A DNA stretch of 64,000 bases. It comes from Macrostomum hystrix (Eukaryota > Animalia > Platyhelminthes). Shown here in pieces: positions 28,700 through 58,100 of the stretch. The notes below the pieces were generated by a model that ran no database searches, was not told where the DNA came from, and saw only the letters and a program-made list of their open reading frames with translations. The stretch lies in contig CATNEN010000026.1 of the NCBI GenBank assembly GCA_950097015.1, positions 1,612,001-1,676,000 on the forward strand, in the 5' to 3' direction. The number at the start of each line of letters is the position of its first letter. Positions within the stretch are counted from its first letter, which is position 1. A program made the position numbers and the translations under genes.

Positions 28700-29270
28700 C
28701 CAGCTCCATAGGTACAGTTCTTAGACAGACAACACCTCTGTCGTCTCGATATTCCCCGCTTTGAATAGCCCGGCCGATGTCGCAACCGCCACCAGGCTAA
28801 TAATAATGATAATAATAATAATAATTTCAGGAGGGCTGCGGGCAATGGCACATCGTTTAGTGACACTAGACCCGCAGCCTGCGAGGAGGCAATTCAGCCC
28901 ATTCCGTTGACTCATGAGCACACACGCGCACAGATACCGTACGCAGGCACACGCTCACACAGGTGTGTACATCTACCCCTGACTTTCTCATCGTCAGGCA
29001 GTGTACACTTTCGCTGTGCCTTGGAGGTTGGCCCTCAAGGGCGTAAATTGCACGACAAGCCACCAAGCCTTCTCTCGGCGGCTGCGCCCCAAATAAATGT
29101 GGCCTCGCCGTGGAATCGAACTTAGGGACCTTGGTGCGAGAGGCAAACGCTTTAACCGCTCTGCCACCGACCCCCTCGCCACCAGGTCGGGCTGGGCTTC
29201 CTCAGCCGAGGAGGCAAGCAGGTCATCGGCGTAACCCAGGAGCGACAGCCGCTTATTACTCAGGTTTCTG
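28700..29270 (-). mobile_element. LINE reverse-transcriptase remnant with YADD motif, split by a SINE
   Basis: Removing the SINE and one TSD copy gives NKRLSLLGYADDLLASSAEEAQPDLVAVATSAGLFKAGNIETTEVLSV; YADD at 29222-29233. Confidence 0.75.
28797..29175 (-). mobile_element. tRNA-derived SINE family 2, full-length
   Basis: 5' GGGGGTCGG, A box TGGCAGAGCGG, B box AGTTCGATTCC, (ATT)n tail, 10-bp TSD cgccaccagg at 28787-28796 and 29177-29186. Confidence 0.9.
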
Positions 29271-34805: not shown

Positions 34806-35388
34806 CCTGTCAGGTGCCAGGTGCTAGGTGCAATCCGGCTTCACCTCTCAGGTAACTAATTATTGGTCATCCGATTCAGAATATTTAGAAGCTTTGAACC
34901 GGCTGCCCACGCATGGAACCAGAAAGCCATTTGGAAATCTAGAAAAGGGATTCTATTACAGCCGGATTATTAGTCAGCAGATACTGGCCGGGAACCGACC
35001 CCCGAGCCAAATTCTGATTAACAAAGCTCTTCCCCTTTAGATATTTCTTCATCGGGGCTTCCTAATCTTAGTGGGCCTGCGTGATTAGTGCTTATTAAGG
35101 CATAAATATGCAAGGCAAATATGAATGGCATCAGTCTAATGCACAGATTCAGGCCTTCATGCATAGCCCCCTGATTGCGTGCCGCCGCAGTCGGCTGGAT
35201 TACTGCTCCAAACCTGAAAATTAAACTGATCAATTCCAACTTATTGGCTTTCAATTCGCCCACACAGCGACTGCCAGGGGCTTCACTTATGCTTTTTCAA
35301 AGCAATTTCAATCTCATTTGATATTTCGATGCTTTTATTCAAGTGATTAACGTTTTGGTCTAATTTGCCTCTATCTCATCTTAACTGT

Positions 35389-35692
35389 CCACTCCTCTCC
35401 TCTCCTCTCCTCTCCTCTCCTCTCCTCTCCTCTCCTCTCCTCTCCTCTCCTCACCTCTCCTCTCCCCTCCCCTCCCCTCCCCTCCTCTCCTCTCCTCTCC
35501 TCTCCTGTCCTCTCCTCCCCTCTCCTCTCCTCTTCTCTTCTCTCCTCTCCTCTCCTCTCCTCTCCTCTCCTCTCCTCTCCTCTCCTCTCCTCTCCTCTCC
35601 TCTCCTCTCCTCTCCTCTCCTCTCCTCTCCTCTCCTCTTCTCTCCTCTCCTCTTCTCTCCTCTCCTCTCCTCTCCTCTCCCCTCCCCTCCTC
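35389..35692. repeat. (CCTCT)n microsatellite
   Basis: Direct reading. Confidence 0.97.
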
Positions 35693-36088
35693 ATAAAAAT
35701 GAAAATTAAAACATAAAAATTACTCGAGCCGACTTCGAGGATCCTCTTGATAAAATGTTGACAAAGAACGCAATCTGCAGGTCATGCAATGATTTCCCAC
35801 TGCGTCTCACTGCACAGTAACTACCATGCTTTATATCCAAATCAGCCGTGAGTGGATTGATGACGAGGACCTCTGCAGAACTCTGCTATTAGAGAATGCT
35901 TATGACCAATTAGTGGTGAAGAAGACAAGAAAATTGCAAAAACGTTTTTGATACGTTTTTGATATTCATTTTTTCCTTTCTGAGAAGAATTTCTTATAGT
36001 GAGGCATCTGATGGCAACATCAAATGCCTCACTATAGCCAGAAAAGTAGCCAGAACAGTAGCTAGAACAGTAGCTAGAACAGTAGCTC

Positions 36089-37123: not shown

Positions 37124-40100
37124 ATGGCAAAAGCGGCTGTTATATTATCGGCTGCTTGCTTCTGGCTCTGCTGCATACTGACTGCAGCTGCAGCTGATCT
37201 GTGAGTTTTCAGCGCTTCCTAATGCACCTGTTTTTCATTGTTCTGCTGCAAACAATGCCCTTTCTCTGGAACAGTAGCTAGAACAGTATCTAGAACAGTA
37301 GCTAGAACAGCAGCTAGAACAGCAGCTAGAACAGTAGCTAGAACAGTAGCTAGAACAGTATCTAGAACAGTAGCTAGAACAGCAGCTAGAACAGCAGCTA
37401 GAACAGTAGCTAGAACAGTAGCTAGAACAGCAGCTAGAACAGTAGCTAGAACAGCAGCTAGAACAGTATCTAGAACAGTAGCTAGAACAGTATCTAGAAC
37501 AGTAGCCAGAACAGTATCTAGAACAGTCGCTAGAACAGTATCTAGAACAGTAGCTAGAACAGTATCTAGAACAGTAGCTAGAACAGTAGCTAGAACAGAA
37601 GCCAGAACAGTAGCTAGAACAGTAGCTAGAACAGTAGCTAGAACAGTATCTAGAACAGTAGCTAGAACAGAAGCCAGAACAGTAGCCAGAACAGTAGCCA
37701 GAACAGTCGCTAGAACAGTAGCTAGAACAGTAGCTAGAACAGTATCTAGAACAGTAGCCAGAACATTAGCTAGAACAGTAGCTAGAACAGTATCTAGAAC
37801 AGTAGCCAGAACAGTAGCTAGAACAGTAGCTAGAACAGTAGCCAGAACAGTAGCTAGAACAGTAGCCAGAACAGTAGCTAGAACAGTAGCTAGAACAGTA
37901 GCTAGAACAGTAGCTAGAACAGTAGCCAGAACAGTAGCTAGAACAGTAGCTAGAACAGTAGCCAGAACAGTGGCTAGAACAGTATCTAGAACAGTAGCTA
38001 GAACAGTATCCAGAACAGTAGCCAGAACAGTAGCCAGAACAGTCGCTAGAACAGTAGCTAGAACAGTAGCTAGAACAGTATCTAGAACAGTAGCCAGAAC
38101 ATTAGCTAGAACAGTAGCTAGAACAGTATCTAGAACAGTAGCTAGAACAGTAGCTAGAATCGCAGCTAGAACAGTAGCTAGAACAGTAGCTAGAACAGTA
38201 GCCAGAACAGTCGCTAGAACAGTAGCTAAAACAGTAGCCAGAACAGTAGCCAAAACAGTAGCCAGAACACTAGCCAGAACAGTAGCCAGAACAGTAGCTA
38301 GAACAGTATCTAGAACAGTAGCTAGAACAGTAGCTAGAACAGTATCTAGAACAGTAGCCAGAACAGTAGCTAGAACAGCAGCTAAAACAGTATCTAGAAC
38401 AGTAGCTAGAACAGTATCTAGAACAGTAGCCAGAAGAGTATCTAGAACAGTCGCTAGAACAGTATCTAGAACAGTAGCTAGAACAGTAGCTAGAACAGTA
38501 GCCAGAACAGTAGCTAGAACAGTAGCTAGAACAGTAGCCAGAACAGTAGCTAGAACAGTAGCTAGAACAGTATCTAGAACAGTAGCTAGAACAGTATCTA
38601 GAACAGTAGCTAGAACAGTATCTAGAACAGTAGCTAGAACAGTAGCTAGAACAGAAGCCAGAACAGTAGCTAGAACAGTAGCTAGAACAGTAGCTAGAAC
38701 AGTAGCTAGAACAGTATCTAGAACAGTAGCTAGAACAGTATCTAGAACAGTAGCTAGAACAGTATCTAGAACAGTAGCTAGAACAGTAGCTAGAACAGAA
38801 GCCAGAACAGTAGCTAGAACAGTAGCTAGAACAGTAGCTAGAACAGTATCTAGAACAGTAGCTAGAACAGTATCCAGAACAGTAGCCAGAACAGTAGCCA
38901 GAACAGTCGCTAGAACAGTAGCTAGAACAGTAGCTAGAACAGTATCTAGAACAGTAGCCAGAACATTAGCTAGAACAGTAGCTAGAACAGTATCTAGAAC
39001 AGTAGCCAGAACAGTAGCTAGAACAGTAGCTAGAACAGTAGCCAGAACAGTAGCTAGAACAGTAGCCAGAACAGTAGCTAGAACAGTAGCTAGAACAGTA
39101 GCTAGAACAGTAGCTAGAACAGTAGCCAGAACAGTAGCTAGAACAGTAGCTAGAACAGTAGCCAGAACAGTGGCTAGAACAGTAGCTAGAACAGTAGCTA
39201 GAACACTGTGAAGCAGGTGACGATGTCTTTCAGAGAGGTCTTCTTATGTTTCCGGAAATTAAAAGATGATGTACTTGTAGTAGGCTAACTATTTCTCAAA
39301 TTTTAACTTTCTCAGGCCGAAAATATTTTCAAGCCAAGGCAATCTCTTCATTGTAGCGAAGAATGGCAAAAATATCGAATTCAAAACGAAAAACACCGGA
39401 CAAATTATAGTTGGTCCGCACAACCTGCTACAACTCGCCGACGAGGTGATTTTACCGGATATCTCTATTGGGGATCAGTCTGAAATGGGGATCAGTCTGA
39501 AATGGGGATCAGTCTGAAATGGGGATCAGTCTGAAATGGGGATCAGTCTGAAATGGGGATCAGTCTGAAATGGGGATCAGACTGAAATGGGGATCAGTCT
39601 GAAATGGGGATCAGTCTGAAATGGGGATCAGTCTGAAATGGGGATCAGTCTGAAATGGGGATCAGTCTGAAATGGGGATCAGACTGAAATGGGGATCAGT
39701 CTGAAATGGGGATCAGACTGAAATGGGGATCAGTCTGAAATGGGGATCAGTCTGAAATGGGGATCAGTCTGAAATGGGGATCAGTCTGAAATGGGGATCA
39801 GTCTGAAATGGGGATCAGTCTGAAATGGGGATCAGTCTGAAATGGGGATCAGACTGAAATGGGGATCAGTCTGAAATGGGGATCAGTCTGAAATGGGGAT
39901 CAGTCTGAAATGGGGATCAGTCTGAAATGGGGATCAGACTGAAATGGGGATCAGTCTGAAATGGGGATCAGTCTGAAATGGGGATCAGTCTGAAATGGGG
40001 ATCAGTCTGAAATGGGGATCAGACTGAAATGGGGATCAGTCTGAAATGGGATGGCAATGTCGGAATTCTTGAAACCCAAATGAAAATATCGGTTGAAATT

Positions 40101-43100
40101 TTACAGTTCTCATCCGTGTCGACCGGGCTGCAGAGCATTCGCGAGTCCTTGGATACCAACGTGAGCAGGGCGTTTGATCGCCTGCAAAGCTTGCAGACCT
40201 CGCTGCGATCGCACACAACCGAATTTCAGCGACTCGGACTCAGAAACCTGCCCCATCAAGTCACCAGGCTCAACAATCAACTGGCGTCTATGGCCAGCAA
40301 TGTTCATTACTTCAGAAACCAGGTGCGCAAAGTTCAGCCCAAGAAAAAAATGCTCGTTTTATTACTTACGCATTCCCCATATTACTTACACATTCCCCAT
40401 ATTACTTACACACTCCCCATATTACTTACACACTCCCCATATTACTTACACATTCCCCATATTACTTACACATTCCCCATATTACTTACACATTCCCCAT
40501 ATTACGTACACATTCCCCATATTACTTACACATTCCCCATATTACTTACACATTCCCCATATTACTTACACATTCCCCATATTACTTATACATTCCCCAT
40601 ATTACTTATACATTCCCCATATTACTTACACATTCCCCATATTACTTACACATTCCCCATATTACTTATACATTCCCCATATTACTTACACATTCCCCAT
40701 ATTACTTACACATTCCCCATATTACTTACACACTCCCCATATTACTTACACACTCCCCATATTACTTACACATTCCCCATATTACTTACACATTCCCCAT
40801 ATTACTTACACATTCCCCATATTACGTACACATTCCCCATATTACTTACACATTCCCCATATTACTTACACATTCCCCATATTACTTACACATTCCCCAT
40901 ATTACTTATACATTCCCCATATTACTTATACATTCCCCATATTACTTACACATTCCCCATATTACTTACACATTCCCCATATTACTTATACATTCCCCAT
41001 ATTACTTATACATTCCCCATATTACTTACACATTCCCCATATTACTTACACATTCCCCATATTACTTACACACTCCCAATATTACTTACACATTCCCAAT
41101 ATTACTTACACATTCCCCATATTACTTACACATTCCCCATATTACTTACACATTCCCCATATTACTTACACATTCCCCATATTACTTACACATTCCCCAT
41201 ATTACTTACACATTCCCCATATTACTTACACACTCCCAATATTACTTACACATTCCCCATATTACTTACACATTCCCCATATTACTTACACATTCCCCAT
41301 ATTACTTATACATTCCCCATATTACTTATACATTCCCCATATTACTTATACATTCCCCATATTACTTACACTATTTTTTAAGTAAAAAAATATTTTAACT
41401 ACTATTTTAAGTTATCATCCTTACCTATAATTTTAGCTTGGTGCCGCTGCAAGAAATGTGAATGCCATTCAAAGTCATGTAAGTTAGTTACGAGTACAAT
41501 CTTTCTTTTTTGTATTAAACAACGTATTGTGTTTTTAAGACACAAAATCATTATTCGACCATGATTTTTCTTTCCAGATCAGTCAACTTCAAAATGTAAG
41601 CGAACAAAAATATTTTTCCTTTGGCTTGTTGCAGTCATATTTTTTTTATAAAAGGCCCAATTAAATATGACCTAACAAATTATTTCTAACTGGCCATTGC
41701 AGGTAATCTCGTCAAATCCATGCGAAAGCAATCCCTGCCGCAACGGTGGCAACTGCCTCACTCATTACTCGTCTCGCGGTGGCGGCCAACAGCTTGTAGC
41801 CGAGCACCGATGCATCTGCAACGAGGCTTGGACCGTGAGTGACGCGCAAGCAATTTGGTCTCTTTTGATCGGGTAATTTCTAAGAAAGATGTTTGCTGCG
41901 CAAATCACGCCAGGGTCCGAACTGCACAGTGGACAAGGACGAGTGCCTGTACTTTCGTCGGTACAGCACAATATACGGTAAGAAGCATCCGCGAGACTGC
42001 GTCCACGGCAGCTGTGTGAATCAGTACGGCACCTACGACTGTCGCTGCGATGCCGGCTACTACGGTGTCAGGTGGGACCATGATGATGATAATAATAACA
42101 ATAATAATCATCATCATCATCATCATAATTGCATGAGGGCTGTAGGCAATAGCAAATTATTTGGTGGCACTAGATCCGGAGGAGGCAATTCTGCCCATTT
42201 CGTTGACTCTTTGACTTCGTTGACAGATACCGTACGCAGGCACACACTCAAACAGGTGTTTGCATCTGTCCTGATTTTCTCATTGTCAGCCCCTCAAGCC
42301 TTTTCTTGAATCTGAATGGGGCCTCGCCGCGGTAGTATCGAGCTCTGGGACCTTGGTGCCAGAGACGAACGCGTTAGACCGCTCAGCTACTCACCCCCTC
42401 AGGTGTGACCAGGTGCAGGACACGTGCGGCCGCGATGATTTCGCCATGTGCGGCAGCGGCGGTGTCTGCGTCTCCAAGGGTGCTAGTCACGTGTGCGTCT
42501 GTCACGACGGCTTCGAGAATGAGACGCCGGACCTGCGCAGCTCGAAGTGCGTCCGTAGAGCCTGCCAGAAGAGCACCTGCTGGCGCAAAGGCGAGGCCAG
42601 GGCGCTGTGCATTGAGAGGCCGGAGCCGCCCTATTACACCTGCCAGTGCCCGAGAGGTTTCCATGGCAACGGCGAGGACTGCGAAGACATCGACGAGTGC
42701 GCAGAATACGAGTCTAATGCCTGTCCAGCTGGTCGTTACTGCATAAACACGTTCGGTAGCTTCGAGTGCATCTGCAGCTACGGGTACAGAATTGACGCTA
42801 ACGGCAGCTGCGTCTTCATGGCCGGCTGCGCTTGGGATCCGTGTGGACCCTATCAGAAGTGCACCCCGCAGGGCCGATACAGCTACACCTGCCAGTGCAT
42901 GGAGGGCTGGACAGCCGGGGCCGGGGGCGGCTGCCAACTGACCAATCAGAGCGAGGCATTCAACAACTGTACCAGAACCGAAGCTTGCAACAATGGGACC
43001 TGCATGCCGGTGAGGACTGGTCACACTTGGGAAACAGGGGAGGGAAATGAAAGACACACTTAGGAGAGGGGAAGGAAATGAAAGGCACACCAGGGAACTG

Positions 43101-46100
43101 GGGAGGGAAATGAAAGACACACTTAGGAACAGGGGAGGGAAATGAAAAATGAAAGGAACCAGAAGTACAAGGATCTTCGAATGGAAGGTACATCCGCAAA
43201 TTGTTTCCATTTCGCGCTGACATCATCAGGACGACGATAACGGTTTCCGGTGCAGCTGCAAAACTGGCTACACGGGTACCCGGTGCCTGGAGCGTCTGCC
43301 CTGTCCGGACTCAAACTTCTGTCAGAACGGCGGGAGCTGCAGTTTCAACCAGTACGGCATGCAGTGCACCTGCCCTCCGGTTTACTCCGGTCGTCGGTGT
43401 CAGCGGCGGAACAATCCGTGCGGCGGTGTGCGCTCGGATTCCTCCGGTGTCATCAGGTTCGACCCCAGCGTCTATGGCGACCTGCACGACAGCTCGTGCC
43501 AGTGGGAAATCCGCGCCCCGCCGGAGTATGTGAGTACTCAATGATTCCCTTACTTCTAATCTCTGTCACTCAATGATTCCCTTATTTCTAATCTCTGTCA
43601 CTCAATGATTCCCTTATTTCTAATCTCTGTCACTCAATGATTCACTCATTTCTAATCTCTGTCACTCAATGATTCACTCATTTCTAATCTCTGTCACTCA
43701 ATGATTCCCTTATTTCTAATCTCTGTCACTCAATGATTCACTCATTTCTAATCTCTGTCACTCAATGATTCACTCATTTCTAATCTCTGTCACTCAATGA
43801 TTCACTCATTTCTAATATCTGTCACTCAATGATTCACTCATTTCTAATATCTGTCACTCAATGATTCACTCATTTCTAATCTCTGTCACTCAATGATTCA
43901 CTCATTTCTAATCTCTGTCACTCAATGATTCACTCATTTCTAATATCTGTCACTCAATGATTCACTCATTTCTAATATCTGTCACTCAATGATTCACTCA
44001 TTTCTAATATCTGTCACTCAATGATTCACTCATTTCTAATATCTGTCACTCAATGATTCACTCACCCTAACTGACAGAGCGTCACGCTGGTGTTCGTCAA
44101 GTTCAAACTGCGCCAGTCAACCAACTGCCAGGAGGAGTACATTCAAATTGACAACGCCAATAAGTACTGCAGCGTTAGATCTAATTTTGTCTACGAATCC
44201 CTGTTGAGCAACGTGAGCATCTACCTGAAGAAATACAGCATGCAGGACAATGTCACTGAGATTGTTGTTCAGTACTATTTAAGTGAGTCGTAATTTGTCA
44301 TCGCTTCTAGCTAGTTTTAAATTTCGTGTAGTTTACAGTGAGTACAACGTGAGTACAGTGAGTACAGTGAGTACAGTGCGTACAGTGAGTACAGTGAGTA
44401 CAATGGGCACAGTGAGTATAGTAAGTACAGTGAGTACAGTGAGTACAGTGAGTACAGTAAGTACAGTGAGTACAGTGAGTACAGTGAGTACAGTGAGTAC
44501 AGTGAGTACAGTGAGTACAGTGAGTACAGTGAGTACAGTGAGTACAGTGAGTACAGTGAGTACAGTGAGTACAGTGAGTACAGTGAGTACAGTAAGTACA
44601 GTGAGTACAGTGAGTACAGTGAGTACAGTGAGTACAGTGAGTACAGTGAGTACAGTGAGTACAGTGAGTACAGTGCAGTATATGCTGTGTCTGGGCATGC
44701 CATTTTAATTGCAGAATCGCCACCCCAGCTGGCCAAATGCACAGCCGGCAAGTTGGGCAACCTGGTTGCAAACTCTGGCTCACTTCGAATTCCAACCGAT
44801 AGCGGCGGTGACTGGCCTAGCAACAGCACAGCAACCTGCCGACTTAGACTATTCCTACCGGAGTTCGATTCTCGGTCGGAGACGATCTTTTCAATAACAG
44901 GACAACTCGACGACAGTGTGGCTTGTGGTGCTGCAGACAACAACGATATGCTGTCTGTAAGTTCGCGGCGCCAAATTCCAAAAAGCTTCTAAACCAGATT
45001 TCCTAAATTATTTTATTTCACAATCGAAACTTCCAAATTTTAGATCGCCTTCTACGCCAGCAACTCGGAGGGCGCACTGCCAGCTATGCTGCGCAGTAGC
45101 AACTCATGCGACCTACGCAAGCGGATCGCCATCGATGCTTCTGGAGTCTATTTTGAGGCTGTGCTGACTGCCCGCCTAGTTGCGGGCTCCGGGACAGTGT
45201 TTCAGATCGACTGGCGGCCAGCATGTGAGGGAACCGTTTTTTCTGATTAGGGAGGTTTAAGCTGTTGCTATTTTTAGAATGACGTCACATTAGTTAGGCT
45301 GAAAAACGCAAATTGGCTAATGAGGGTTAAGTTTCTTGTTGCTATTTTTAGAATGATGTCACACAAAAAATGCTTAGATAACAGCTCTCGATTTTAATTG
45401 GATTGATTCACCTACGTAGTTGCTATTTTTAGAAAACCAATTTGGGTTATCTCTTTTTAAATGACAATGTGCACGTGATATACCTCAGTCAATGATAATT
45501 TAGCGGCATAGTTTTTTTGCAAATCCGGTTTGTTTTTGGACAAAACCAAAAACAAAACCAAAAACAAAACATTTTAGCGCACTAAAATGAATGTCTGGAA
45601 ACTTTTACTTGTTGAGATTTACCTTGTCAAGTCTCATCCCTGGAAATCATGTTAGTAAAAAAGCCTAGCGTTTTGCTGCTTTTAGTCGATTGCTCGGCAT
45701 TCGACAGTGCGTCGAACGCGTCGCCACACGGAGTGCTGCACTTCACCGCTGCCACAGCGCACTGCGGCCAGACTATCAACTATCCGCTGCAGCTTCCGTT
45801 TGTGCTGAAGGTGCTACGAACTGATGGCGCCGCTGGGCGGTCATCAATCTGCTTGATGGTGAGTCACTTGTTATATAGCTGATGAGTCACTCCATTTTAA
45901 ACCGATGAGTTACTCACTCCTCAGAAAACTGATGAGTCACTCCTTAGAAAGCCAATGAAGTCACTTCTAAGAAAGCCGATCAGTTACTCCTAGGAACCGT
46001 TTGAAATAGCACACATTTGCTAGCTAATGCTTGGACAGGGAAATTAGCTGGAAATGACACCTTTTTAAGGACTTATTCTGGCCTAGAACAAGGCATTGGT

Positions 46101-49100
46101 GGCAGGAAACTGAGGCAGCGGATGTCAGAACCACACTGGATAAAATTGCGACAAAATATTTCCGACAGTTTTAATTAAAATTTTCTTCTGCCTGGCTTGT
46201 ATACAAAGTATTGGCGAAAAGATGCCTAAATGTACTTCTCTTATTCCTATCTTTATTCTAATGTCTACTGAACTAAGGTGCGCACCGCGGGACTATCCAG
46301 TCAGGAGCACCGACACTTTGGCTGCCACTCGCCCGGAGACACGATCGGCCCAATTTATCCCGTCATGCTCGGCAGCGGCGCCATCCGAGTCACCAGCTGG
46401 CGGTTTGACGGCAACTTCGAGGTCGAATGGTCACCGAGTGAGCCTCAATGGCTGTTTTTCTGAAGGGTTGGAGGAGGAGAGAGTGGCAGCCCATTATCAA
46501 CAGACTCGGGGAGGAGGAGGGGGAGAGTGGCAGCCCATTATCAACAGACTCGGGGAGGAGGAGGAGAGAGTGGCAGCTCATTATCAACAGACTCGGGGAG
46601 GAGGAGGGGAGAGTGGCAGCCCATTATCAACAGACTCGGGGAGGAGGAGGGGAGAGTGGCAGCCCATTATCAACAGACTCGGGGAGGAGGAGGGGAGAGT
46701 GGCAGCCGATTATCAACAGACTCGGGGAGGAGGAGGGGAAAGTGGCAGCCCATTATCAACAGACTCGGGGAGGAGGAGGGGAGAGTGGCAGCTCATTATC
46801 AATAGACTCGGGGAGGAGGAGGGGAGAGTGGCAGCCCATTATCAACAGACTCGGGGAGGAGGAGGGGAAAGTGGCAGCTCATTATCAACAGACTCGGGGA
46901 GGAGGAGGGGAGAGTGGCAGCCCATTATCAACAGACTCGGGGAGGAGAAGGGGGAGAGTGGCAGCTCATTCTCTTCATCGCTTCTCCAATCTGAAAATAT
47001 TTTTTCCAGTCAACTGTTCGTACACCATCAACGCTGTCAGCAGCGAGTGGGTGAGCCACAGTGCGCCAGAATGGACAGCCACCGTCGGTGATTCGCTAGA
47101 ACTGCTTCACTGCAGCTACCTGCTGCGAGCTGCTGATGGCATGCAGGTAGAAATCTCACTGCCACCGGTGGTCATCGAAGGAGCTTGCGAGGATAACTAC
47201 CTACAGGTGAGCAGCCATTTATAAGTAGCTACTTCTTTAAACTCAGAAACACACCAAGCTACAAATCTATCTAGCTACACATCTATCAAGCTACACATCT
47301 ATCAAGCTACACATCTATCTAGCTACACATCTATCAAGCTACACATCTATCTAGCTACACATCTATCAAGCTACACATCCATCAAGCTACAAATCTATCA
47401 AGCTACACATCTATCAAGCTACACATCTATCAAGCTACACATCCATCAAGCTACAAATCTATCAAGCTACAAATCTAACAAGCTACACATCTATCAAGCT
47501 ACACATCTATCTAGCTACACAATCTAGCTACACATCTATCTAGCTACACATCTATCTAGCTACACATCTACCAAGCTACACATCTATCAAGCTACACATC
47601 TACCAAGCTACACATCTATCAAGCTACACATCTATCAAGCTACACATCTATCTAGCTACACATCTATCTAGCTACACATCTATCAAGCTACACATCCATC
47701 AAGCTACACATCTATCAAGCTACACATCTATCTAGCTATACATCTATCTAGCTATACATCTATCTAGCTACACATCTACCAAGCTACACATCTATCAAGC
47801 TACACATCTACCAAGCTACACATCTATCTAGCTACACATCTATCAAGCTACACATCCATCAAGCTCCACATCCATCAAGCTACACATCTACCAAGCTACA
47901 CATCTACCAAGCTACACATCTACCAAGCTACACATCTATCTAGCTACACATCTATCAAGCTACACATCCATCAAGCTCCACATCTATCAAGCTACACATC
48001 TACCAAGCTACACATCTACCAAGCTACACATCTATCAAGCCGTTCTGTCTGCGGGTCGACTGCGCCAAAACAGCTGACAAAACCCTATAGAATAGTATAA
48101 TAAGGGGCATCAATTAAAAGACAGCTCATTAAGCGTGTAACATTAACAAGCAGAAGAACGAATTGAAAGGCGCATTTAAAAATCGATAACTTCGGTAATT
48201 TCAGCTCGGCCTGACAATCTTGAACAACACACGGACTGAGTACTTTCAGCACTATAAACTCTGCGGCATGGTTGAGGCTCTCAATATGACTACATCAATG
48301 TCTGGCCAGCTGTCTCTGGTGCTGCACGGACGGCCGAGATATATTTCCGGCTTCAACGGTTTCCGCTACCGTTTGCGGGGTAAGCGAAAGCCAGTTGCTT
48401 ACTTATAGGAACTTCTCCTGTCATAATCAATGACCTGTCATTATTGTCATTAGACAACTATGCAATTTTACAAGGTCAAGTCCATAAAGTACTTCAAATA
48501 TATTACGTACATCACCGATGCGTACACGATGTGTAAAAGTTTGTGTACTTTAGCAAGCCACTTAACTCAGGAATTTCCCCAGTCCATGGACTTAATAGCC
48601 GAACGCAGCCTTCAGATGCTCCGCGCAATAGCTGGAGGCTGTGCTGTCGGCTGCACATCTGGCCAAAATGGGGGCAGGTGCAACCAACTATAAGTATCAA
48701 TAATGATTAGGCATTTAGTGTGTTCGTACGGTTTAAATGTCTATGGTAAAAAGCTAGTCTAATGCATCTAGATTAGACTAGCTTTAGCGAATAGCGAATC
48801 CATACTGGTTAAAAAAATAAAACGATAAATATAACCAATACAAATATAATCAACTATGATAGCCGACATGGTTATATGATGAAATTTTGTGAGCAAAATA
48901 TTACCACCAGACAACCCGCCGAGAATCGTTGAATATCTCGACGATGCCGATGTTTTGAAATTCTGGAAGTTGTTTCATCGGATAAAGCGGTAAATTTTAG
49001 CCCGTGATCCAAAATTTCATCACGATTGGTTGAACATTTCAGGATAGAGACAGAAAAAACAAAAGTGTGGGTACTTGAAAACGTGGTCTTTGTACTGCTA

Positions 49101-52100
49101 GATGCTGAAGGGTTGCAACTAGCTCGTATCCTCAAAGGATCCTCTATTCTCTACGGGTTCCCAAGGTTTGCCTCTATCACTCATCGGTGTCGAGGCTTGC
49201 CCCTGTGTCATTAAGAATTGTCACAACGTTCGTGTCATCCTCAATGGGATTGTTGAAGGCTGACACCGTCTCTGGTATTTTCATACGTCACTCCAATACA
49301 AACCTATGAGTCACTCCGATGAAAACCGATGAAGCACTCCGATATAAATCGATGAGTCACTCAAATAAAAACCGATGAAGCACTCCAACATAAATCGATG
49401 ACTCACTCCAATATAAACCAATGAGTCGCTCCAATAAAAACCGATGAGTCACTCCAATATGAATCAATGAGTCACTCAAATAAAATCCGATGAAGCACTC
49501 CAACATAAATCGATGAGTCACTCCAATATAAACCGATGAGTCACTCCAATATGAACCGATGAGTCACTCCGATGAAAACCGATGAGTCAATCCAATATAT
49601 ATCGATGAGTCACTCCAATATGAGCCGATGAGTCACTCCAATATGAGCCGATGAGTCACTCCAATATGAGCCGATGTGTCACTCCAATATATATCGATTA
49701 GTCACTCCAATATGAACCGATGAGTCACTCCAATATGAATCGATGAGTCACTCCAATATGAACCGATGAGTCACTCCGATGAAAACCGATGAGTCACTCC
49801 GATGAAAACCGATGAGTCACTCCGATGAAAACCGATGAGTCAATCCAATATAAATCGATGAGTCACTCCAATATAAACCGATGAGTCACTCCAATATAAA
49901 TCGATGAGTCACTCCAAAATAAACCGATGAGTCACTCCTATGAAAGCAGAGTGTCACATCCGTATCATCCTCACTGAGATTGTTGAAGGCTGTCACCGTC
50001 TCTGGTATTTTCATACGTCCTTTGCAGAATGCGGCGGTACCATTGTGCTGCCGCAGGTCAGAAGCTGGGCGACCCTGCGCTACCCGGACGGTCCGGTCAG
50101 CAACTCGGCCGGCTACAGGCCCGGCGTTGTCTGCGAATGGCAGGCGCTGTCGCTGGACTCCACCGCCGAGATCTACTTGACGGTGGCCGTTTTCCGGCTG
50201 GCGCCTCCCGAGAGTGGCAGCTGCTTGGCCGACTCGCTGACTGTGGCCAGCCAGGGCGACAATGTCACGAATACGTGAGAAAAAAATGTGCTCTAAAGCT
50301 GCTACTGGCAAATGTAATGAGTAGGGGGTGAGTGGCAGAGCAGTCTCGCCGGAATGGGCTAAATTGCCTCCTTGCTGGATGCCGAGTCTACTCACATCAA
50401 TTGATGCGTCGGTGCCTCAGTCCAGTGAGCACTGAGAAGTCCGGAGTTCGAGTATCAGTTAAATGGAAGCAATATGTGTCCTAGACAAAGACACTTAATT
50501 CCCCAGTGCATCGGTTCACCCAGCTGTACAATGGTTACCAGCATCTGCTGAGAAATTAGTGTGTGTGTGTGATTGCCTCCCAGTCCACAGACTTGACAGT
50601 TGTAAAGACAGTTGATCTTCCTCAAAATGCACAGCTACTGCGGCGATCACGGCCCGCCGTCCCGAGTGCACCGAGCCAGCCGGCTGTCGATTCGCTTCCG
50701 AGCGGCCATGTCGGGACCGCTGGCCGGCCGAGAAGGCTTCGAGATGAGATTCCTGGCCGTTCGGGCGGGCCTGACGGACCTGCTGGCTGGGCCAGTCGAC
50801 CGGCTGATCGACCTGCGAACTCTGCGCTCCAGCGGCCGCGTCATTCGAATCTACGCCGAGCGACGCACTCAGTTCATTGTGTTGAATGTGACGGCGGTGG
50901 CGTCGGCAAACGCCCGCAGCTCCTGCATTCTTGTGCTCTACGGGTGAGTCAGCGAATGAGTCAGCGAATTCGGCAGAATTGCCTCCTCTTGTGTGACCAA
51001 ATGATGCGCCATTACCTGCGACCCTCCAGGAATTATTCTTATCATTAATTGTAACGTTAGCGTTACCTTTTCGATACATATCGGCAAATAAAATTAACAG
51101 CCAATATAAATCACCACAGCGGAAACCAGGTGGAATGCATCCGACCAATAAACAAGGTGTACTCAACCAGCACCTCATCCATGCTGCTAGTATTCAAAGA
51201 TCGTCAACAGTTATCCTACCTGAGACAGTTCAACATTCGCTACAGAGCGGATGAATCTCAGGCTTGCAATAGCCGGCTAGACATGTGGACAATGGGCTTG
51301 TCTAAAACCTTCCTCATGCCCGCCCTGATTGGCCAGCCAGTGCCAGTTGAGGTGCAGCTATGCCGGACACTGCTGCTCATACCATCAGGCAATCGGCTAA
51401 ACATCAGCAGCCGGGTTCAGTGCCCGGCACTGGAAACTGGAGGACGAACTGTGCCTGTTGTGCGAGTAAGAAGTCAAACTTGATAGATGTGTAGCTTGGT
51501 AGATGTGTAGCTTGGTAGATGTGTAGCTTGGTAGATGTGTAGCTTGGTAGATGTGTAGCTTGGTAGATGTGTAGCTTGGTAGATGTGTAGCTTGGTAGAT
51601 GTGTAGCTTGGTAGATGTGTAGCTTGGTAGATGTGTAGCTTGGTAGATGTGTAGCTTGGTAGATGTGTAGCTTGGTAGATGTGTAGCTTGGTAGATGTGT
51701 AGCTTGGTAGATGTTTTTATTGTTTTAAGCGCACAGTGTTTACTGAGCTACTCCCCGAACATGTCAATCAAGGTGTCAGAGCGCATTGGCCGAGACCAGG
51801 TGCCTGTGGCCTGGCTGCCCTGCTCAAGGCCCGGCCAGACACTCAGCAGCCTGTACAGCGGGGAGTCATTCTACATTGACTACGTGAAGCCTGCTGCAAT
51901 TCAGGCTCCATTGGTTTACCTGCTGGTCACAGCGAGCATCGGTGAGTTTGCTAGAGTTCCGTGTCGTCATTCTTTAAGTGTCACCCGCTGTACTAGAGAT
52001 CTCCGCAGCCCCTATCGCGGTGGTTTCCATGGATCGAGTCACGTTGGTTTCTGTAGTTCCAATCGTGGTGGTTTGCATAGATCCAATCATGGTGATTTTG

Positions 52101-55100
52101 CATAGATCCAATCTCGGTGGTTTCCATAGATCCAGTCACGTTGGTTTCCGTAGTTCCAATCGTCGTGGTGGTTTTCCATAGATCCAATCACGGTGGTTTC
52201 CTTAGTTCTAATCGTGGTGGTTTTCCATTGATCCAATCACGTTGGTTTCCGTAGTTCCAATCGTGGTGGTTTCCATAGATACAATCACGTTGGTTTCCAT
52301 AGATCCAATCTCGATGGTTTCCCTAGATCCAGTCATAGTGGTTTCCATAGATTGAGTCACGGTAGATTGCTTTCGTATTTCTACTCGTAATCACGGTGGT
52401 TTCCGTAGTTCCAATCGCGGTGGTTTCCGTAGATCCAATCATGGTGATTTCCATAGATCCAATCTCGGTGGTTTCCATAGATCCAGTCACGTTGGATTCC
52501 ATAGATCCAATCGCAGTGGTTTCCCTAGATCCAGTCATAGTGGTTTCCATAGATTGAGTCACGATAGATTGCTTTCGTATTTCTAATCACGGTGGTTTCC
52601 GTAGTTCCAATCACGGTGGTTTCCGTAGTTCCAATCGTGGTGGTTTTCCATAGATCCAATCACGGTGGTTTCCTTAGTTCCAATCGTGGTGGTTTCCATA
52701 GATCCAGTCACAGTGGTTTCCTCGCTTTGTTGGTTTCTCAGCTTTGATTAGAATATCGCCATGCATGGCGTCTCACCGCAACCGCCCGCAGACTGCAACG
52801 TGACCCTATCAGACACCAGCGGCCTGCTTCAGTCACCGGCTAGCGGCCCGTGTCGCTGGGTATTGAAGCCCCGGCTCGCCTTTGCAATGCAAATTGACAT
52901 TGTGCCAACCAATTTGACTAATTCACTGCAACAGCCCGAACAGAATTGCACCGGGAGCGCTAAGGTTGAGTTTGTGCTCTTTCAAGATGCTTCTTTATTA
53001 AAATCAGCTTCCCAATCGCTAATCCGATTCCCATTGCTAGTGATTCCCAATTTATACGAGTTTATCCCACCTTCCGGTCCACCAGATCACGGACTCGCTG
53101 GGCCAGGTGCTTTACGAAGAAGCCGACTGCCAGCCGTTGACCAACATCTCCGAGGGCGTCAGCACTCTGGCCGATTCGGTTATCGTTGAATGGAACTACT
53201 CGCTGCGGCGATACTCCTCCGGGTGGGCCTACAGATTCAGGCTCTCTTATGACGGGCATCGTGAGCTACTGCTTCTTCTGTTGGGACTTTTATTCTGCCT
53301 ATTTTGAATATTTTACTATCGTATCTCAACTTCTCTCGGCTTGCTTCCCTTACTCAGCTCCTTCTCTTCTGCTCTCCTCACCTCTGCTCTGCTCTCCTCT
53401 CCTCTCCTCTCCTCTCCTCCTCTCTCCTCTCCTCTCCTCTCCTCTCCTCTCCTCTCCTCTCCGCGCTTCTCCAATCCTCTCCTCTCCTCTCCTCTCCGCG
53501 CTTCTCCAATCCTCTCCTCTCCTCTCCTCTCCTCTCCAATCCTCTCCTCTCCAATCCTCTCCTCTCCAATCCTCTCCTCTCCTCTCCTCTCCTCTCCAAT
53601 CCTCTCCTCTCCAATCCTCTCCTCTCCTCTCCTCTCCTCTCCAATCCTCTCCTCTCCAATCCTCTCCTCTCCAATCCTCTCCTCTCCTCTCCTCTCCTCT
53701 CCAATCCTCTCCTCTCCAATCCTCTCCTCTCCTCTCCTGTCCTATTGTTTTCTGATGGATCGGCTTCTTTACAGCCTGCAGTCGGTCACTGCGACAGTCA
53801 AGCGGGACAATCAGGTACCCGGATGACAGTGACGAGTCACCAATATCCTGCGAATGGCAAATTGAAGTCGAGCCGGGCTATCAGATCCAATGGAGCGCAG
53901 AGCTGAGTCTGGGCAATGTGCAGCCCAGGCAGGCCTACCTGGCTGTGTGGGAGGGCACCAGGCCACCCGCTAGCGACTCGGCCGTGTCCGAATACGAATG
54001 GAAATTCACCGGCACGGCTAGCAAGTCGGGTAGAACCGTCGGCAGCTCCTTGTACGTGATGTTCTACGCCAATGCGAGACAGCTGGCTGGAATACCAGTG
54101 TCCTTCCGCCTCAGCTATTGGAGCCAGCACTCAAGCGGTAGCGGCATTATGTTTTTTTTTACCCTCCCAAGAGATAGTTAATAATTCACAGGGCACTCAA
54201 CTATTATGGGACAACAACTAGTGACATACGACCTTCCCGTGAAACCAATAATTACATTTGACCTTCCAATGAAACCATTAGCATCATTTGACCTTCTGAT
54301 GAAAACACTAGTGACATTTGACCTTCCCATGAAACCACTAGTGACATTTGACCTTCCCATGAAACCACTAGCATCATTTGACCTTCCCATGAAACCACGG
54401 AACCACTAGCGACATTTGACCTTCCCATGAAACCACTAGTGGCATTTGACCTTCCCATGAAACCACGGAACCACTAGCGACATTTCACTAGTCGCTTAGT
54501 GACACAGGTAGTGACATAACCACTACCTTCCCATGAAACCACTAGTGGCATTTGACCTTCCCATGAAACCACGGAACCACTAGCGACATTTGACCTTCCC
54601 ATGAAGCCACTAGTGACATTTGACCTTCCCATGAAACCACTAGCATCACTTGACCTTCCCATGAAACCACTAGCATCACTTGACCTTCCCATGAAACCAT
54701 TAGCATCATTTGACCTTCCCATGGAACAAGTAAACACATTTTTACCTCGAATATTGCAGTTTGCGGCGGCCATTTTCAAAGCTCAACTGGGCGCTTTGCC
54801 TCTCACCGCGACTTCGGCCACTCGCGCTATCCAAAGAACGCGGACTGCGCTTGGCTCGTTGCCAGCGACCCGCATCACTACCTGAACCTGACTTTTGTCA
54901 ACTTTAGCACACCTGTTGAAGGCAGCGACTACATGACTGTGAGAGCCACATGAGCTAAATAAAAATATGAGTGAACTGTGAATATATTATCGAAAAGAAG
55001 AGAATTGCTATATTCGATATTTGTTTGAGGTATTTAAATCTACTAGACTCGAGAAGTCAAGAGACTAAATTTCAGAGAAGAGATCTACAAGATTCGAATA

Positions 55101-58100
55101 GTCGAGAGACTAGATGCGAGGAAAGAGATCTACTAGATTCGAATAGTCGAGAGACTAGATGCGAGGAAAGAGATCTACAAGATTCGAATAGTCGAGAGAC
55201 TAGACGTGAGGGAAGAGATCTACTAGATTCGAATAGTCGAGAGACTAGACGTGAGGGAAGAGATCTACTAGATTCGAATGGTCGAGTGACTAGAAATGAG
55301 GAAAGAGATCTACTAGATTCGAATAGTCGAGAGACTAGACGTGAGGGAAGAGATCTACTAGATTCGAATAGTCGAGAGACTAGACGTGAGGGAAGAGATC
55401 TACTAGATTCGAATAGTCGAGAGACTAGACGTGAGGGAAGAGATCTACTAGATTCGATTGGTCGAGGGAGATATCGCAGCAAAGATATACTAGATCAGAG
55501 AGTTCTGTGACGCCAGAATTCTCTAATCGAATGGAAAAAGCTGAAACTATTCTGTCCTCTAATCTCACACTTTCAGACCTACACCACGTGGTCAAGAGAC
55601 GCCAGCTTCAATGTGGCATTTCCTTTGAACAGGAACGTCACCAGTGCGGGCCCGGCTGATCGAACGGGTCGTATCAAGGGCAATCCGCAGCTACCGCTGC
55701 AGTACATCAACGAGAGGCAGTCGGCACTGAGGAGCGAGTTTGTCACAGACGACGATCAGAACGGAGAGGATCCAACTTCGGCGGGATTTTTGGCACTTTT
55801 CCAACAGCGTGAGTTCAATAGGAAGCGAAGCACATTGTGCATCCTACTTTAGTGCACATTCAAAAGTCAAAGGCTGTGTAGTTTTATGCAGTTTGAGGGG
55901 CTCTCTCTTATAATTTCATTCTCGCGTGCGTCAGACTGCGGCGGAGAGCTCACAGCTGGAGATCACCTGCAAGCCATCGAGTCGCCCAGAGATCAACAGC
56001 GCCAGTGCAGTTGGACCATTGTGGCCAATCAGTCCCAGCCAGGGGGTAAGTCAAACAGCTTGTTTGTACCATAGATATTAAAAACACATGCTGGTGTCTC
56101 GTATCTGGTAGGTTCTAGTACTCGTATACTTCAGTATTATCATGTTCTGTGTCTGCTTTTGTCTTGGACGGAAACTTGAAAAGTGTTTTATGAATAAATT
56201 AGTAGAATTATAACGAAAAAATGTTTACACTTTACACGAAGCAAGCTCGCGGCATTTCAGCAGCTGAAGGCAGAAAAATTGACGGCTTGGAGATTTAAAA
56301 TACAAAATAGTTTCGGTGATTGACAAAAAGTCGGACACAAAAAACTGAAAATTAGCTTTGTGCTTTCAAGAAATCACAGTTAAAAAATACTAGCTTTCAG
56401 TGGCCTCTACGTAAGTAGTCATGCACACATCCTGCTTGACTTGCAGATTCAGTTCTACTGTACTTCTCCGAAGTGCACTGCCGATTCATCGACCTGACAG
56501 TTAATTACACACTCGGCAGTGGCAACTATCATAGGCGGATCTGCAGTCGGGACTACAGCGGCGATACGGAGAGCGAAGACTTGGCGTTCACAGTTAACCA
56601 GGCCCGGATCCTGTACACGGCCTATCGGCACTCATTCATCTTCACGTCGTCCAGCGGCTTTGTGCTGCACTACGGCATGGCCAGATCAAGTAACATCATA
56701 GCTTTGCTATATGCCGCAATTTTTGTCTATACGGACTCACAGAAAGCCATTTGATGATAACAGCAAGGAACTGACACTAGCGTAATTTAATCTCCATCCA
56801 GGCTGCGATTTTGACTTTAGTAGCACATTCAGCGGCTACATCCAGTCCTATCCGAGCATCGAGAGCATCAGTCCGGGCGAGCCGTTCTTCTGCGAATGGC
56901 GCCTTCAGGCTGGCGACGGCTGGATCATCCGGCTGGACATTGTGTACGCCCTATTTAAATGTAGTTTTAAATCTTAAAATCTTAACTGTCGGGTGAACAA
57001 CGGAGTAACCAAACTCAAATCCGCGGCGAGACCACATTCATTTGCGACGTTACAGCTAGTGGTAGTGTCATTGCCTGACGATGAGAAAGCTGTCCATATA
57101 TGCTTAAGAGTGTGATTATAAGCCTGAGTACGTATCAGTGTTATTGTGTGTGTGCTCAGGGGCCAATGGAATGAAAATACAAAATTTCCTGCTACATCGT
57201 TTTTTATTATTACTCCAACGACACTACTGATGGAAAAAATCTATCCATTGAGAATTTTAGATGTTTCCAAATTACAGCTCTCTGAGAATCGACGCCGGAA
57301 GCGACTGTTACGACAACTTCCTGGATCTCAGGCGACGCAACGACTCAGGCCTTGAGGTCACCAGCTTGCTCTGCAGTCCTACTTTTACCAGCCAATCAGA
57401 TCGAGTTTTCTTTGCCGAACAGATTCGTTTGAAGCAGCGTCGAGGTCCGATGACAACGCCCCGAAATTTCGAGTTCAAACTGAAATTCACCAGGGAGCCA
57501 TTCGTGTTTCCGAATGCTAACAGCGGAGTATTGACTTCGCCGCTGCATCCAAGGAGCTACATGTCTGACCAAGAGTTTGTCTGGCGGCTGAGGGTTCGAA
57601 GCTGGCAAGTTGTGCGATTCACCGTCGAAGATTTTCAGATTGAAACAAGTTGCTACGACTATATTGAGGTGGGCTAAGAAACTTAATGCTAATAAATCTT
57701 TTGATACAACCCTAAATTACTGCAGTGCCTCTACATAAACCTCGAACAAATGACTATATTTTAGTTGACTGAGGCCAACAGAGTTCAGCGGTACTGTTCC
57801 AGAGGATATGCTGGAACCTCCATTCCAGAGGGTGGAGTGTTCTACTCGTCTAGTTCAGATGTACTTTTCAAGTTTCACGCTGACATCTCCATCGACCACT
57901 TTGCCGGCTTTAGGATTCGGTGGGCAGCTGTGTCTAGAAGTCAGCGAGGTAAAAATTAACGTTTGTAATAGGCTCTGTGAGCCTTCTATCAGTGTCATTA
58001 AATTTATATTATTACTCCTGACAGAATGCAACCAGGTGCTTCAAGCGTCACGGTGGCCGCAGACCTTCTCCTATCCGTCGCCACCCGCCACCAATTACGA

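What the first reader, a model, noticed from the sequence alone, without database searches (positions are those of the whole stretch)
42068..42411. A spliceosomal intron apparently created by a SINE insertion, with the target-site duplication supplying both splice sites
Seen in the sequence: cubilin intron 5 (42072-42402) contains only an antisense, full-length SINE2 (42081-42398) and parts of a 13-bp direct repeat, TCAGGTGGGACCA (42068-42080) and TCAGGTGTGACCA (42399-42411). The repeat carries an AG|GT proto-splice site, so the left copy gives the donor (AG|gtggga) and the right copy gives the acceptor (cag|G). The antisense SINE head supplies the pyrimidine-rich run ctcaccccct. Splicing restores exactly the presumed pre-insertion sequence GGTGTCAGGTGTGACCAG, which completes the EGF motif CDAGYYGVRCDQ. 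The single TSD mismatch lies on the intronic side. The same SINE family makes a 10-bp TSD at 28787/29177, so this repeat is a credible TSD. Established knowledge: documented introner elements are mostly DNA transposons. Inference: this is a recent retrotransposon-driven intron gain, and the family may act as an introner wherever it hits an exonic AGGT.
Basis: partly seen in the sequence, partly recalled or inferred. Interest (0 to 1): 0.9.

Follow-up and report, generated by a model that had tools for sequence, protein, structure and literature searches.

The report
Old SINE insertion turned into an intron
A short jumping-DNA element (SINE) landed inside a coding exon of a cubilin-like gene, and the 13-base duplication it made supplies both splice sites, so the cell cuts it out as an intron; this is a clean animal example of a known but rarely documented way of gaining an intron, and the insertion is old, not recent.

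Summary
A 13-bp direct repeat (12/13 identical) at 42068-42080 and 42399-42411 abuts an antisense SINE at 42081-42398. Removing 42072-42402 (331 nt, GT..AG) restores the frame and the last cysteine of an EGF module; keeping it shifts the frame into stop codons.

The repeat is a real target-site duplication. Other copies of this SINE family carry 9-15-bp duplications at the same element ends. Because the repeat reaches into both exons, the 13 bases were continuous when the SINE landed. That rules out an older intron later filled by a SINE.

An RNA contig (run X3) joins exon 5 directly to exon 6 with no mismatch, and it also lacks the neighbouring 79-nt intron. The mature mRNA therefore lacks the SINE.

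"Recent" is not supported. This copy is 14-17% diverged from the family consensus, against 2-11% for 16 other copies. It has several private deletions, and its diagnostic stretches are unique in the 220-Mb genome.

"The family acts as an introner" was not shown. Of 74 antisense copies with AGGT beside the head, I read 50, and none restored a convincing coding frame. Other unchecked notes of this scan list at least seven similar candidates on other DNA of this genome.

Precedents exist: the rice catalase A SINE intron, Alu intronization, and non-LTR introners. I could not test whether the same animals that gave the RNA carry the SINE, or whether related species have an unbroken exon.

The parts
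41914..42071 (+). Upstream exon (EGF module), ending ...GGTGTCAG. Its last 4 bases belong to the left repeat copy.
   Evidence: Open frame. Pfam EGF_CA and EGF_2 match its translation. RNA contigs in X2 and X3 cover 41914-42061/42067, and the 79-nt intron 41835-41913 in front of it is spliced out.
42068..42080 (+). Left copy of the 13-bp target-site duplication, TCAG|GTGGGACCA. It supplies the donor GT at 42072-42073.
   Evidence: It directly abuts the SINE tail. The G at 42075 is the only difference from the right copy.
42072..42402 (+). The intron: 331 nt, GT..AG, phase 2 (AG|G of an Arg codon). It consists of 9 nt of the left repeat copy, the SINE, and 4 nt of the right repeat copy.
   Evidence: Removing it restores the frame; keeping it gives stop codons. 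X3 record 10 joins 42067 to 42399, which is the same cut given the repeated TCAG, with 0 mismatches. Splice signals are comparable with the neighbouring introns.
42081..42398 (-). SINE copy, antisense to the gene. Both ends are intact, it is internally deleted, and it is 14-17% diverged from the family consensus.
   Evidence: Its diagnostic deletion junctions are unique in the genome.
42081..42129 (-). SINE 3' tail, a trinucleotide repeat (ATG/ATT/ATC units in the sense reading). It lies right behind the donor-side repeat copy.
   Evidence: Sequence. The family tail is (ATT)n.
42315..42398 (-). SINE head with A-box and B-box-like motifs. Read antisense, it gives gctcagctactcaccccc, the pyrimidine-rich run and a likely branch-point region in front of the acceptor.
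   Evidence: It matches consensus positions 1-80 at 81%. 75% of the 20 nt before the AG are pyrimidines, against 60-65% in the two neighbouring introns.
42399..42411 (+). Right copy of the target-site duplication, TCAG|GTGTGACCA. It supplies the acceptor AG at 42401-42402 and the first 9 exon bases, including the Cys codon TGT.
42403..43008 (+). Downstream exon (several EGF modules, 201 codons from 42404).
   Evidence: Pfam cEGF, EGF_CA and EGF_3. RNA contigs cover 42399-43008, and the next intron, 220 nt long, is spliced.

Best explanation
A SINE retroposed, antisense, into the middle of an EGF-coding exon of a single-copy cubilin-like gene. LINE-type integration duplicated 13 bases of the exon (TCAGGTGTGACCA), which happened to contain AG|GT. 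The left copy now provides the donor (CAG|GTGGGA). The right copy provides the acceptor (TCAG|G). The antisense SINE head provides the pyrimidine tract and probably the branch point. The spliceosome removes the SINE plus one copy of the duplication (331 nt) and rebuilds the pre-insertion coding sequence exactly. The event is old: the element has decayed in place, and the intronic repeat copy has picked up one substitution (T to G at donor +4). Shown here: the anatomy, the restored frame, the family-typical duplication, and SINE-less mRNA. Inferred: that this mRNA comes from the SINE-bearing allele by splicing, that integration went by target-primed reverse transcription, and that the +4 change slightly helps U1 pairing.
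For: Repeat and element boundaries. Frame restored by removal, stops if retained, EGF signature completed. Other copies carry 9-15-bp duplications directly at the same head and tail ends (L003 13 bp, L006 14, L026 13, L027 12; the window copy at 28811-29175 has 10). The repeat spans both exon edges (4 nt of exon 5, 9 nt of exon 6), so the site was uninterrupted at the time of insertion. RNA: X3 record 10 (384 nt) equals 33 nt of the exon before, plus 41914-42067, plus 42399-42595, with 0 mismatches; two introns are removed in one molecule. No exact contig lies inside the SINE in X2 or X3. X2, X3 and X6 splice the flanking introns, and X6 has a 10.6-kb contig, so the gene is expressed and intact. 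Age: 14-17% divergence against 2-11% for other copies, with private indels unique in the genome. A presence/absence polymorphism that old is unlikely, and the junction contig is identical to the assembled haplotype in 351 flanking bases. No empty site and no close paralogue occur elsewhere in the assembly. Run X1 (DNA) holds 95% of the words of the stretch.
Against: Only one contig from one run bridges the junction. The tool's own joint table did not list it, because the microsatellite at 42074-42135 was masked, so I read it from the piece table. The X2 contigs stop at 42061 and start at 42399. Contigs cannot show splicing efficiency or rule out retention. No DNA from the animals that gave the RNA was examined, so an allele without the SINE is not formally excluded. 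No orthologous locus from another species could be obtained.
Confidence: 0.85

Rival explanations
1. The SINE is an unspliced, gene-breaking insertion present in the assembled haplotype, either as a null allele or in a decaying gene. The SINE-less RNA then comes from a second allele that never received it.
For: An empty allele would give exactly the same junction sequence as splicing. The RNA study (P2, 2020) differs from the genome study (P1, 2023), and X2 shows two SNPs against the assembly.
Against: The copy is far more decayed than other family members and its changes are private, which fits long residence and fixation. The X3 junction contig matches the assembled haplotype with 0 mismatches. 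All flanking exons stay open and are expressed. The donor, acceptor and pyrimidine tract are as good as in neighbouring introns. No empty site exists in the assembly.
Confidence: 0.07
2. An old intron stood at this position, and a SINE later inserted into it and came to fill it.
For: SINEs commonly sit in introns. This gene's window holds other SINE fragments in non-coding stretches. No outgroup was available to show an uninterrupted exon.
Against: The intron holds nothing but the SINE and one repeat copy. The repeat includes 4 exonic bases on the left and 9 on the right, so the two exon edges were adjacent when the element integrated. An older intron would have had to be zero bases long.
Confidence: 0.02
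3. The intron arose by repair of a double-strand break that captured a SINE cDNA or DNA as filler, with the short repeat made by the repair. This is the model proposed for Daphnia intron gains. Ordinary retroposition would then not be involved.
For: New introns flanked by short AGGT-containing repeats are known from repair or duplication events (PMC2394776 background; PMC3265369, listed).
Against: The element is complete from its first G to its tail. The repeat abuts both ends exactly, and its length (13 bp) is typical of ordinary copies of the family. This is the signature of normal LINE-mediated integration.
Confidence: 0.03
4. An assembly artefact: a SINE was wrongly placed in the exon by the assembler.
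For: Repeats can be misplaced. Only one assembly was seen.
Against: This copy is unique in sequence, with its best other copy 81% identical. A clean duplication flanks it. The contigs of DNA run X1 hold 95% of the words of the 1951-nt stretch, though that run may be the assembly's own source.
Confidence: 0.02

Closest known systems
[quoted passage not shown]
   Same: A SINE inserted into a coding exon and is removed as a spliceosomal intron.
   Different: That case is a plant gene and a different SINE family. I could not read the original paper, so I cannot say whether the target-site duplication supplies both splice sites there. The case here is in an animal, and the duplication gives both sites.
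Alu 'intronization' in human 3' UTRs (Sela et al. 2007, PMC2394776)
   Same: SINE insertion into an exon activates a new intron. An antisense SINE contributes a pyrimidine tract and a 3' splice site.
   Different: The four human cases lie in untranslated last exons and are alternative (retention also seen). Their splice sites lie within the Alu or the old exon, not in the duplication. The case here lies in coding sequence, where exact removal is needed to keep the frame.
Introners: transposons that create introns on insertion, with splice sites co-opted from the target-site duplication (PMC9860276, PMC12130899, PMC11282704)
   Same: The intron equals a transposable element plus its duplication, and a splice site is taken from the duplication. 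Non-LTR retrotransposon introners are on record (about 5% of classified families).
   Different: Introners are defined by many near-identical introns in many genes. They are mostly TIR DNA elements with 2-8-bp duplications, and they are rare in animals (two animal groups in 3,325 genomes). Here only one decayed copy is shown. Recurrence was tested in part and not found.
Intron birth by tandem duplication of an AGGT-containing segment (PMC3265369, listed; idea cited in PMC2394776)
   Same: Duplicating an exonic AG|GT gives a donor and an acceptor whose use restores the original message exactly.
   Different: There the intron body is duplicated exon sequence. Here the duplication is only 13 bp and the body is a retroposon that also brings the pyrimidine tract.

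Membership tests
SINE (short non-autonomous retroposon) | Short, non-coding, very many dispersed copies | tested here: met
   The consensus is about 365 nt plus tail. The genome holds 3143 first-look candidates, and 40 were scored.
SINE (short non-autonomous retroposon) | 3' simple-repeat or A-rich tail, and target-site duplications of variable sequence, about 7-20 bp, at both ends | tested here: met
   (ATT)n tails and 9-15-bp duplications occur in other copies; this copy has a 13-bp duplication.
SINE (short non-autonomous retroposon) | Pol III promoter head derived from tRNA (class SINE2) | tested here: inconclusive
   The consensus head has A-box-like GTGGCAGAGCGG and B-box-like GTTCGATTCC. 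ARAGORN finds no tRNA in the window, the consensus or this copy, and Rfam finds none at E up to 1 in either copy of the window.
SINE (short non-autonomous retroposon) | A partner LINE with a matching 3' end | not tested
   No search was made.
Transposon-generated spliceosomal intron | The intron is co-extensive with the element plus its duplication, and the exon is restored exactly on removal | tested here: met
Transposon-generated spliceosomal intron | It is removed from mRNA at the predicted sites | tested here: met
   X3 record 10 joins 42067 to 42399 with 0 mismatches. Support is one contig. Splicing and an empty allele are told apart only by inference from the element's age.
Transposon-generated spliceosomal intron | The exon is uninterrupted at the same site in relatives or paralogues | not testable with these tools
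   The genome has no close paralogue. No orthologue above 50% identity was found in the protein libraries or metagenome contigs.
Introner family (sensu Gozashti et al.) | Many similar element-derived introns in unrelated genes of the same genome | tested here: inconclusive
   Of 74 antisense heads with AGGT within 9 nt, I read 50. Seventeen had a clear duplication and none restored a convincing coding frame. Other unchecked notes list at least 7 further candidates.
Cubilin | An N-terminal run of EGF modules followed by many CUB domains in a very long protein | tested here: inconclusive
   EGF families match the exons at 41914-43541 and CUB matches exons at 59620-61932. The best solved-structure match of a CUB exon is cubilin, but it is weak (E 3.6e-6). 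A 10.6-kb transcript contig exists. Domain counts and orthology were not established.

The most novel reading that the evidence does not exclude
This SINE family is a recurrent retroposon 'introner' in a bilaterian animal. Whenever a copy lands in an exon with AG|GT inside its 9-15-bp duplication, the antisense head (pyrimidine tract) or the sense head variant GGGGGTGAGTGGC (a consensus donor G|GTGAGT) makes it spliceable. The genome has gained a series of introns this way over a long period, and the cubilin intron is one of the older ones.
Probability: 0.35. Interest if true: 0.85.

Novelty: new member of a known kind. Interest (0 to 1): 0.6.

Why it matters
Few introns have an origin that can be read directly from the sequence, and in animals such cases are very rare. 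Here every part of the intron can be traced: donor and acceptor to the two copies of a 13-bp target-site duplication, the pyrimidine tract to the antisense SINE head, and the body to the SINE. The anatomy itself shows that the exon was continuous when the element arrived. This shows that ordinary LINE-driven retroposition, not only cut-and-paste DNA elements, can produce an immediately spliceable, frame-preserving intron in coding sequence. If the other candidates noted in this genome hold up, it would be the first SINE-type introner family that I know of in a bilaterian. That would offer a way to measure how often exonic insertions are rescued by splicing.

Tried and rejected
1. Orthologues for the outgroup test. 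A HMMER search of exon 6 against 1.84 billion representatives returned only multi-EGF proteins at 48% identity or less. Three that I checked have no CUB domains. The word-indexed search found nothing at 1e-20. The metagenome contig scan gave only distant EGF proteins at 28-59% over short stretches. The intron's presence in relatives could therefore not be tested.

2. Empty site or paralogue in the same assembly: none found.

3. Sibling copies sharing this copy's private deletions: none found. I therefore rejected the idea that it is a young copy of a rare subfamily.

4. Genome-wide test of the introner idea. I used the antisense-head + AGGT pattern and an ORF-across-the-junction test. The flagged loci turned out as follows. 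L064 is a minisatellite. L059, L071 and L073 show no coding signal. L072 looks like an antisense open frame. L068 is a SINE that duplicated an existing donor site.

5. A phage-collection BLAST of the SINE was pointless and found nothing.

6. Rfam hits in the tail microsatellite (snoRNA and miRNA models, far below their gathering scores) are chance matches to simple repeats.

7. tRNA recognition of the head failed.

Full report
**What is there**

The window between 41.7 kb and its end carries a long plus-strand gene. Its first exons encode EGF modules and its later exons encode CUB domains (Pfam). The best solved-structure match of a CUB exon is cubilin, though weakly. RNA contigs show it is expressed as a very long spliced message; one contig is 10.6 kb. 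I call it cubilin-like. Orthology was not established.

At 42068-42080 and 42399-42411 lie TCAGGTGGGACCA and TCAGGTGTGACCA, identical at 12 of 13 positions. The 318 bases between them, read on the minus strand, start with GGGGGTGAGTAGC and end in a trinucleotide-repeat tail.

That stretch belongs to a dispersed repeat family with at least 3143 first-look candidates in the 220-Mb genome. In an alignment with 16 other copies, the window copy shares the family's first base and its tail. It lacks about 60 nt of the linker, about 14 nt more near the head, and two blocks of 8 nt.

Joining 42071 to 42403 gives a continuous frame...YDCRCDAGYYGVRCDQVQDTCG..., which completes the EGF cysteine pattern. 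Reading through gives ...GVRWDHDDDNNN... and stop codons, because 331 is not a multiple of three.

**Is the repeat a target-site duplication?**

Yes. Other copies of the family carry direct repeats of 9-15 bp that begin right after the tail and end right before the head. Examples are L003 (13 bp), L006 (14), L026 (13) and L027 (12). The young copy 13 kb upstream in this window has CGCCACCAGG, 10 bp.

At fixed positions, a 12/13 match has a chance probability of about 6e-7. If the five bases CAGGT are discounted as splice consensus, the remaining 7/8 match has a probability of about 4e-4.

The repeat contains 4 bases of the upstream exon and 9 bases of the downstream exon. The two exon edges were therefore adjacent in the DNA when the element integrated.

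**Is it spliced?**

I laid the contigs of four runs on 41650-43600.

- X2 and X3 have no depth in the neighbouring introns, and they carry GT..AG joints at 41834/41914 and 43008/43229. They are therefore RNA.
- X3 record 10 (384 nt, depth 5.3) consists of 42595 down to 42399, then directly 42067 down to 41914, then 33 nt of the exon before. It has no mismatch.
- Because TCAG is repeated, this is the same cut as 42071/42403. The T of the exonic repeat copy is the base kept.
- The tool did not list this joint in its own table, because it masked the microsatellite at 42074-42135. I read the joint from the piece table.
- X2's contigs stop at 42061 and begin at 42399, so they are uninformative.
- All contigs laid inside the SINE carry 5-9 mismatches per 60 nt and come from other copies. 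No exact intron-containing contig was seen.
- X6, labelled as another organism and as DNA, carries spliced contigs identical to the window, so it is RNA of the same species or mislabelled. It does not cover the junction.

Splicing or an empty allele? The junction sequence alone cannot tell the two apart, and I had only one reads call. Three indirect arguments favour splicing.

- **Age.** The copy is 14-17% diverged from the family consensus, against 2.3-11% for 16 other copies and 4.7% for the neighbouring copy. Its deletion junction and its rearranged block occur nowhere else in the genome at up to 3 mismatches. The changes therefore arose in place over a long residence. A frame-breaking insertion in a large, expressed, otherwise intact single-copy gene would not persist that long as a polymorphism.
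- **Haplotype.** The X3 junction contig is identical to the assembled haplotype over 351 flanking bases.
- **Signal quality.** The donor CAG|GTGGGA, the acceptor ...CTCACCCCCTCAG|G and a 75% pyrimidine run are at least as good as in the two RNA-confirmed neighbouring introns.

The intronic repeat copy has one change in its 7 unconstrained bases, which fits the element's overall divergence. That change, T to G at donor +4, would turn a U-U mismatch with U1 into a G-U pair. This last point is inference only.

I put the SINE-made, spliced intron at 0.85.

**What is not supported**

"Recent" is contradicted by the divergence figures above.

"The family acts as an introner" was tested only in part. 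The pattern of antisense head followed within 9 nt by AGGT has 74 genomic matches. I could read 50 of them, and 17 had a clear duplication. The loci with an open frame across the restored junction resolved as follows:

- L064 is a minisatellite.
- L059, L071 and L073 have no coding character.
- L072 looks like an antisense frame.
- L068 is a copy that landed just behind an existing donor site of an SLC6-like exon and duplicated it.

Old copies like the one studied would escape both patterns.

Other notes of this scan list at least seven more "SINE = intron" candidates on other DNA of the same genome. One of them was followed up and read as a real case, and that note calls the organism a flatworm. 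These are unchecked leads. I tested neither them nor the organism's identity.

**Comparison with what is known**

[quoted passage not shown] The same paper describes four Alu "intronizations" in human 3' UTRs.
- Introners, transposons that make introns and often borrow a splice site from their duplication, are mostly TIR DNA elements (about 82%). About 5% are non-LTR retrotransposons (PMC12130899). They are very rare in animals: two animal groups among 3,325 genomes (PMC9860276). Neither survey mentions SINEs.
- Duplication of an AGGT-containing segment is a demonstrated route to a working intron (PMC3265369).

The present case combines these. A retroposon's 13-bp duplication plays the part of the AGGT duplication, and the element brings the pyrimidine tract. 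It is a new and unusually clean member of a known kind. It is not a new kind, and the evidence here does not show an introner family.

**Limits**

- One bridging contig from one run supports the junction.
- No DNA from the RNA donors was examined.
- No outgroup was available.
- The tRNA origin of the head is not confirmed by ARAGORN or Rfam.
- The genome-wide scan is incomplete.

Noticed in passing
L068 (G000:C25:6478382-6481402), left repeat at 1130, right repeat at 1514: A young SINE copy sits directly behind the donor site of an SLC6-transporter-like exon. Its 14-bp duplication (TACAAG|GTGAGCTT and CACAAG|GTGAGCTT) duplicates the 5' splice site, so the gene now has two candidate donors about 384 nt apart.
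   Followed up: partly
Genome-wide, for example G000:C1:3499699-3499715: Most of the 171 matches to AGGT + SINE head are the identical 17-mer AGGTGGGGGTGAGTGGC. A subfamily or composite element therefore has a fixed AGGT in front of the head. The head variant GGGGGTGAGTGGC contains a consensus donor G|GTGAGT in the sense reading.
   Followed up: no
window 28787-29186: A young copy of the same SINE (95% identical to the consensus, antisense on the plus strand) with a 10-bp duplication CGCCACCAGG. It serves as an age contrast to the intron copy.
   Followed up: yes
window 61877-62093, 50958-51046, 57058-57173: Further partial SINE copies (71-88% identical to the consensus) lie inside the cubilin-like gene, apparently in ordinary introns.
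   Followed up: no
window 16934-17683 and 18310-19059: Two stretches give identical open-frame translations about 1.4 kb apart, which points to a tandem segmental duplication upstream of the gene.
   Followed up: no
window 35347-35713, 37223-39208, 40011-41395, 44342-44989, 46442-48097, 53141-53823: Long micro- and minisatellite arrays appear as hundreds of codons of open frame made of repeated peptides (LSSP, VART, YSE, HIYQAT and similar). Their density around and inside the gene is unusual.
   Followed up: no
runs X6 and X10: X6 is recorded as 'organism B, DNA?' but holds spliced contigs identical to the window. X10 ('organism D') holds a 151-nt exon piece with one mismatch. The run labels do not match the content.
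   Followed up: no
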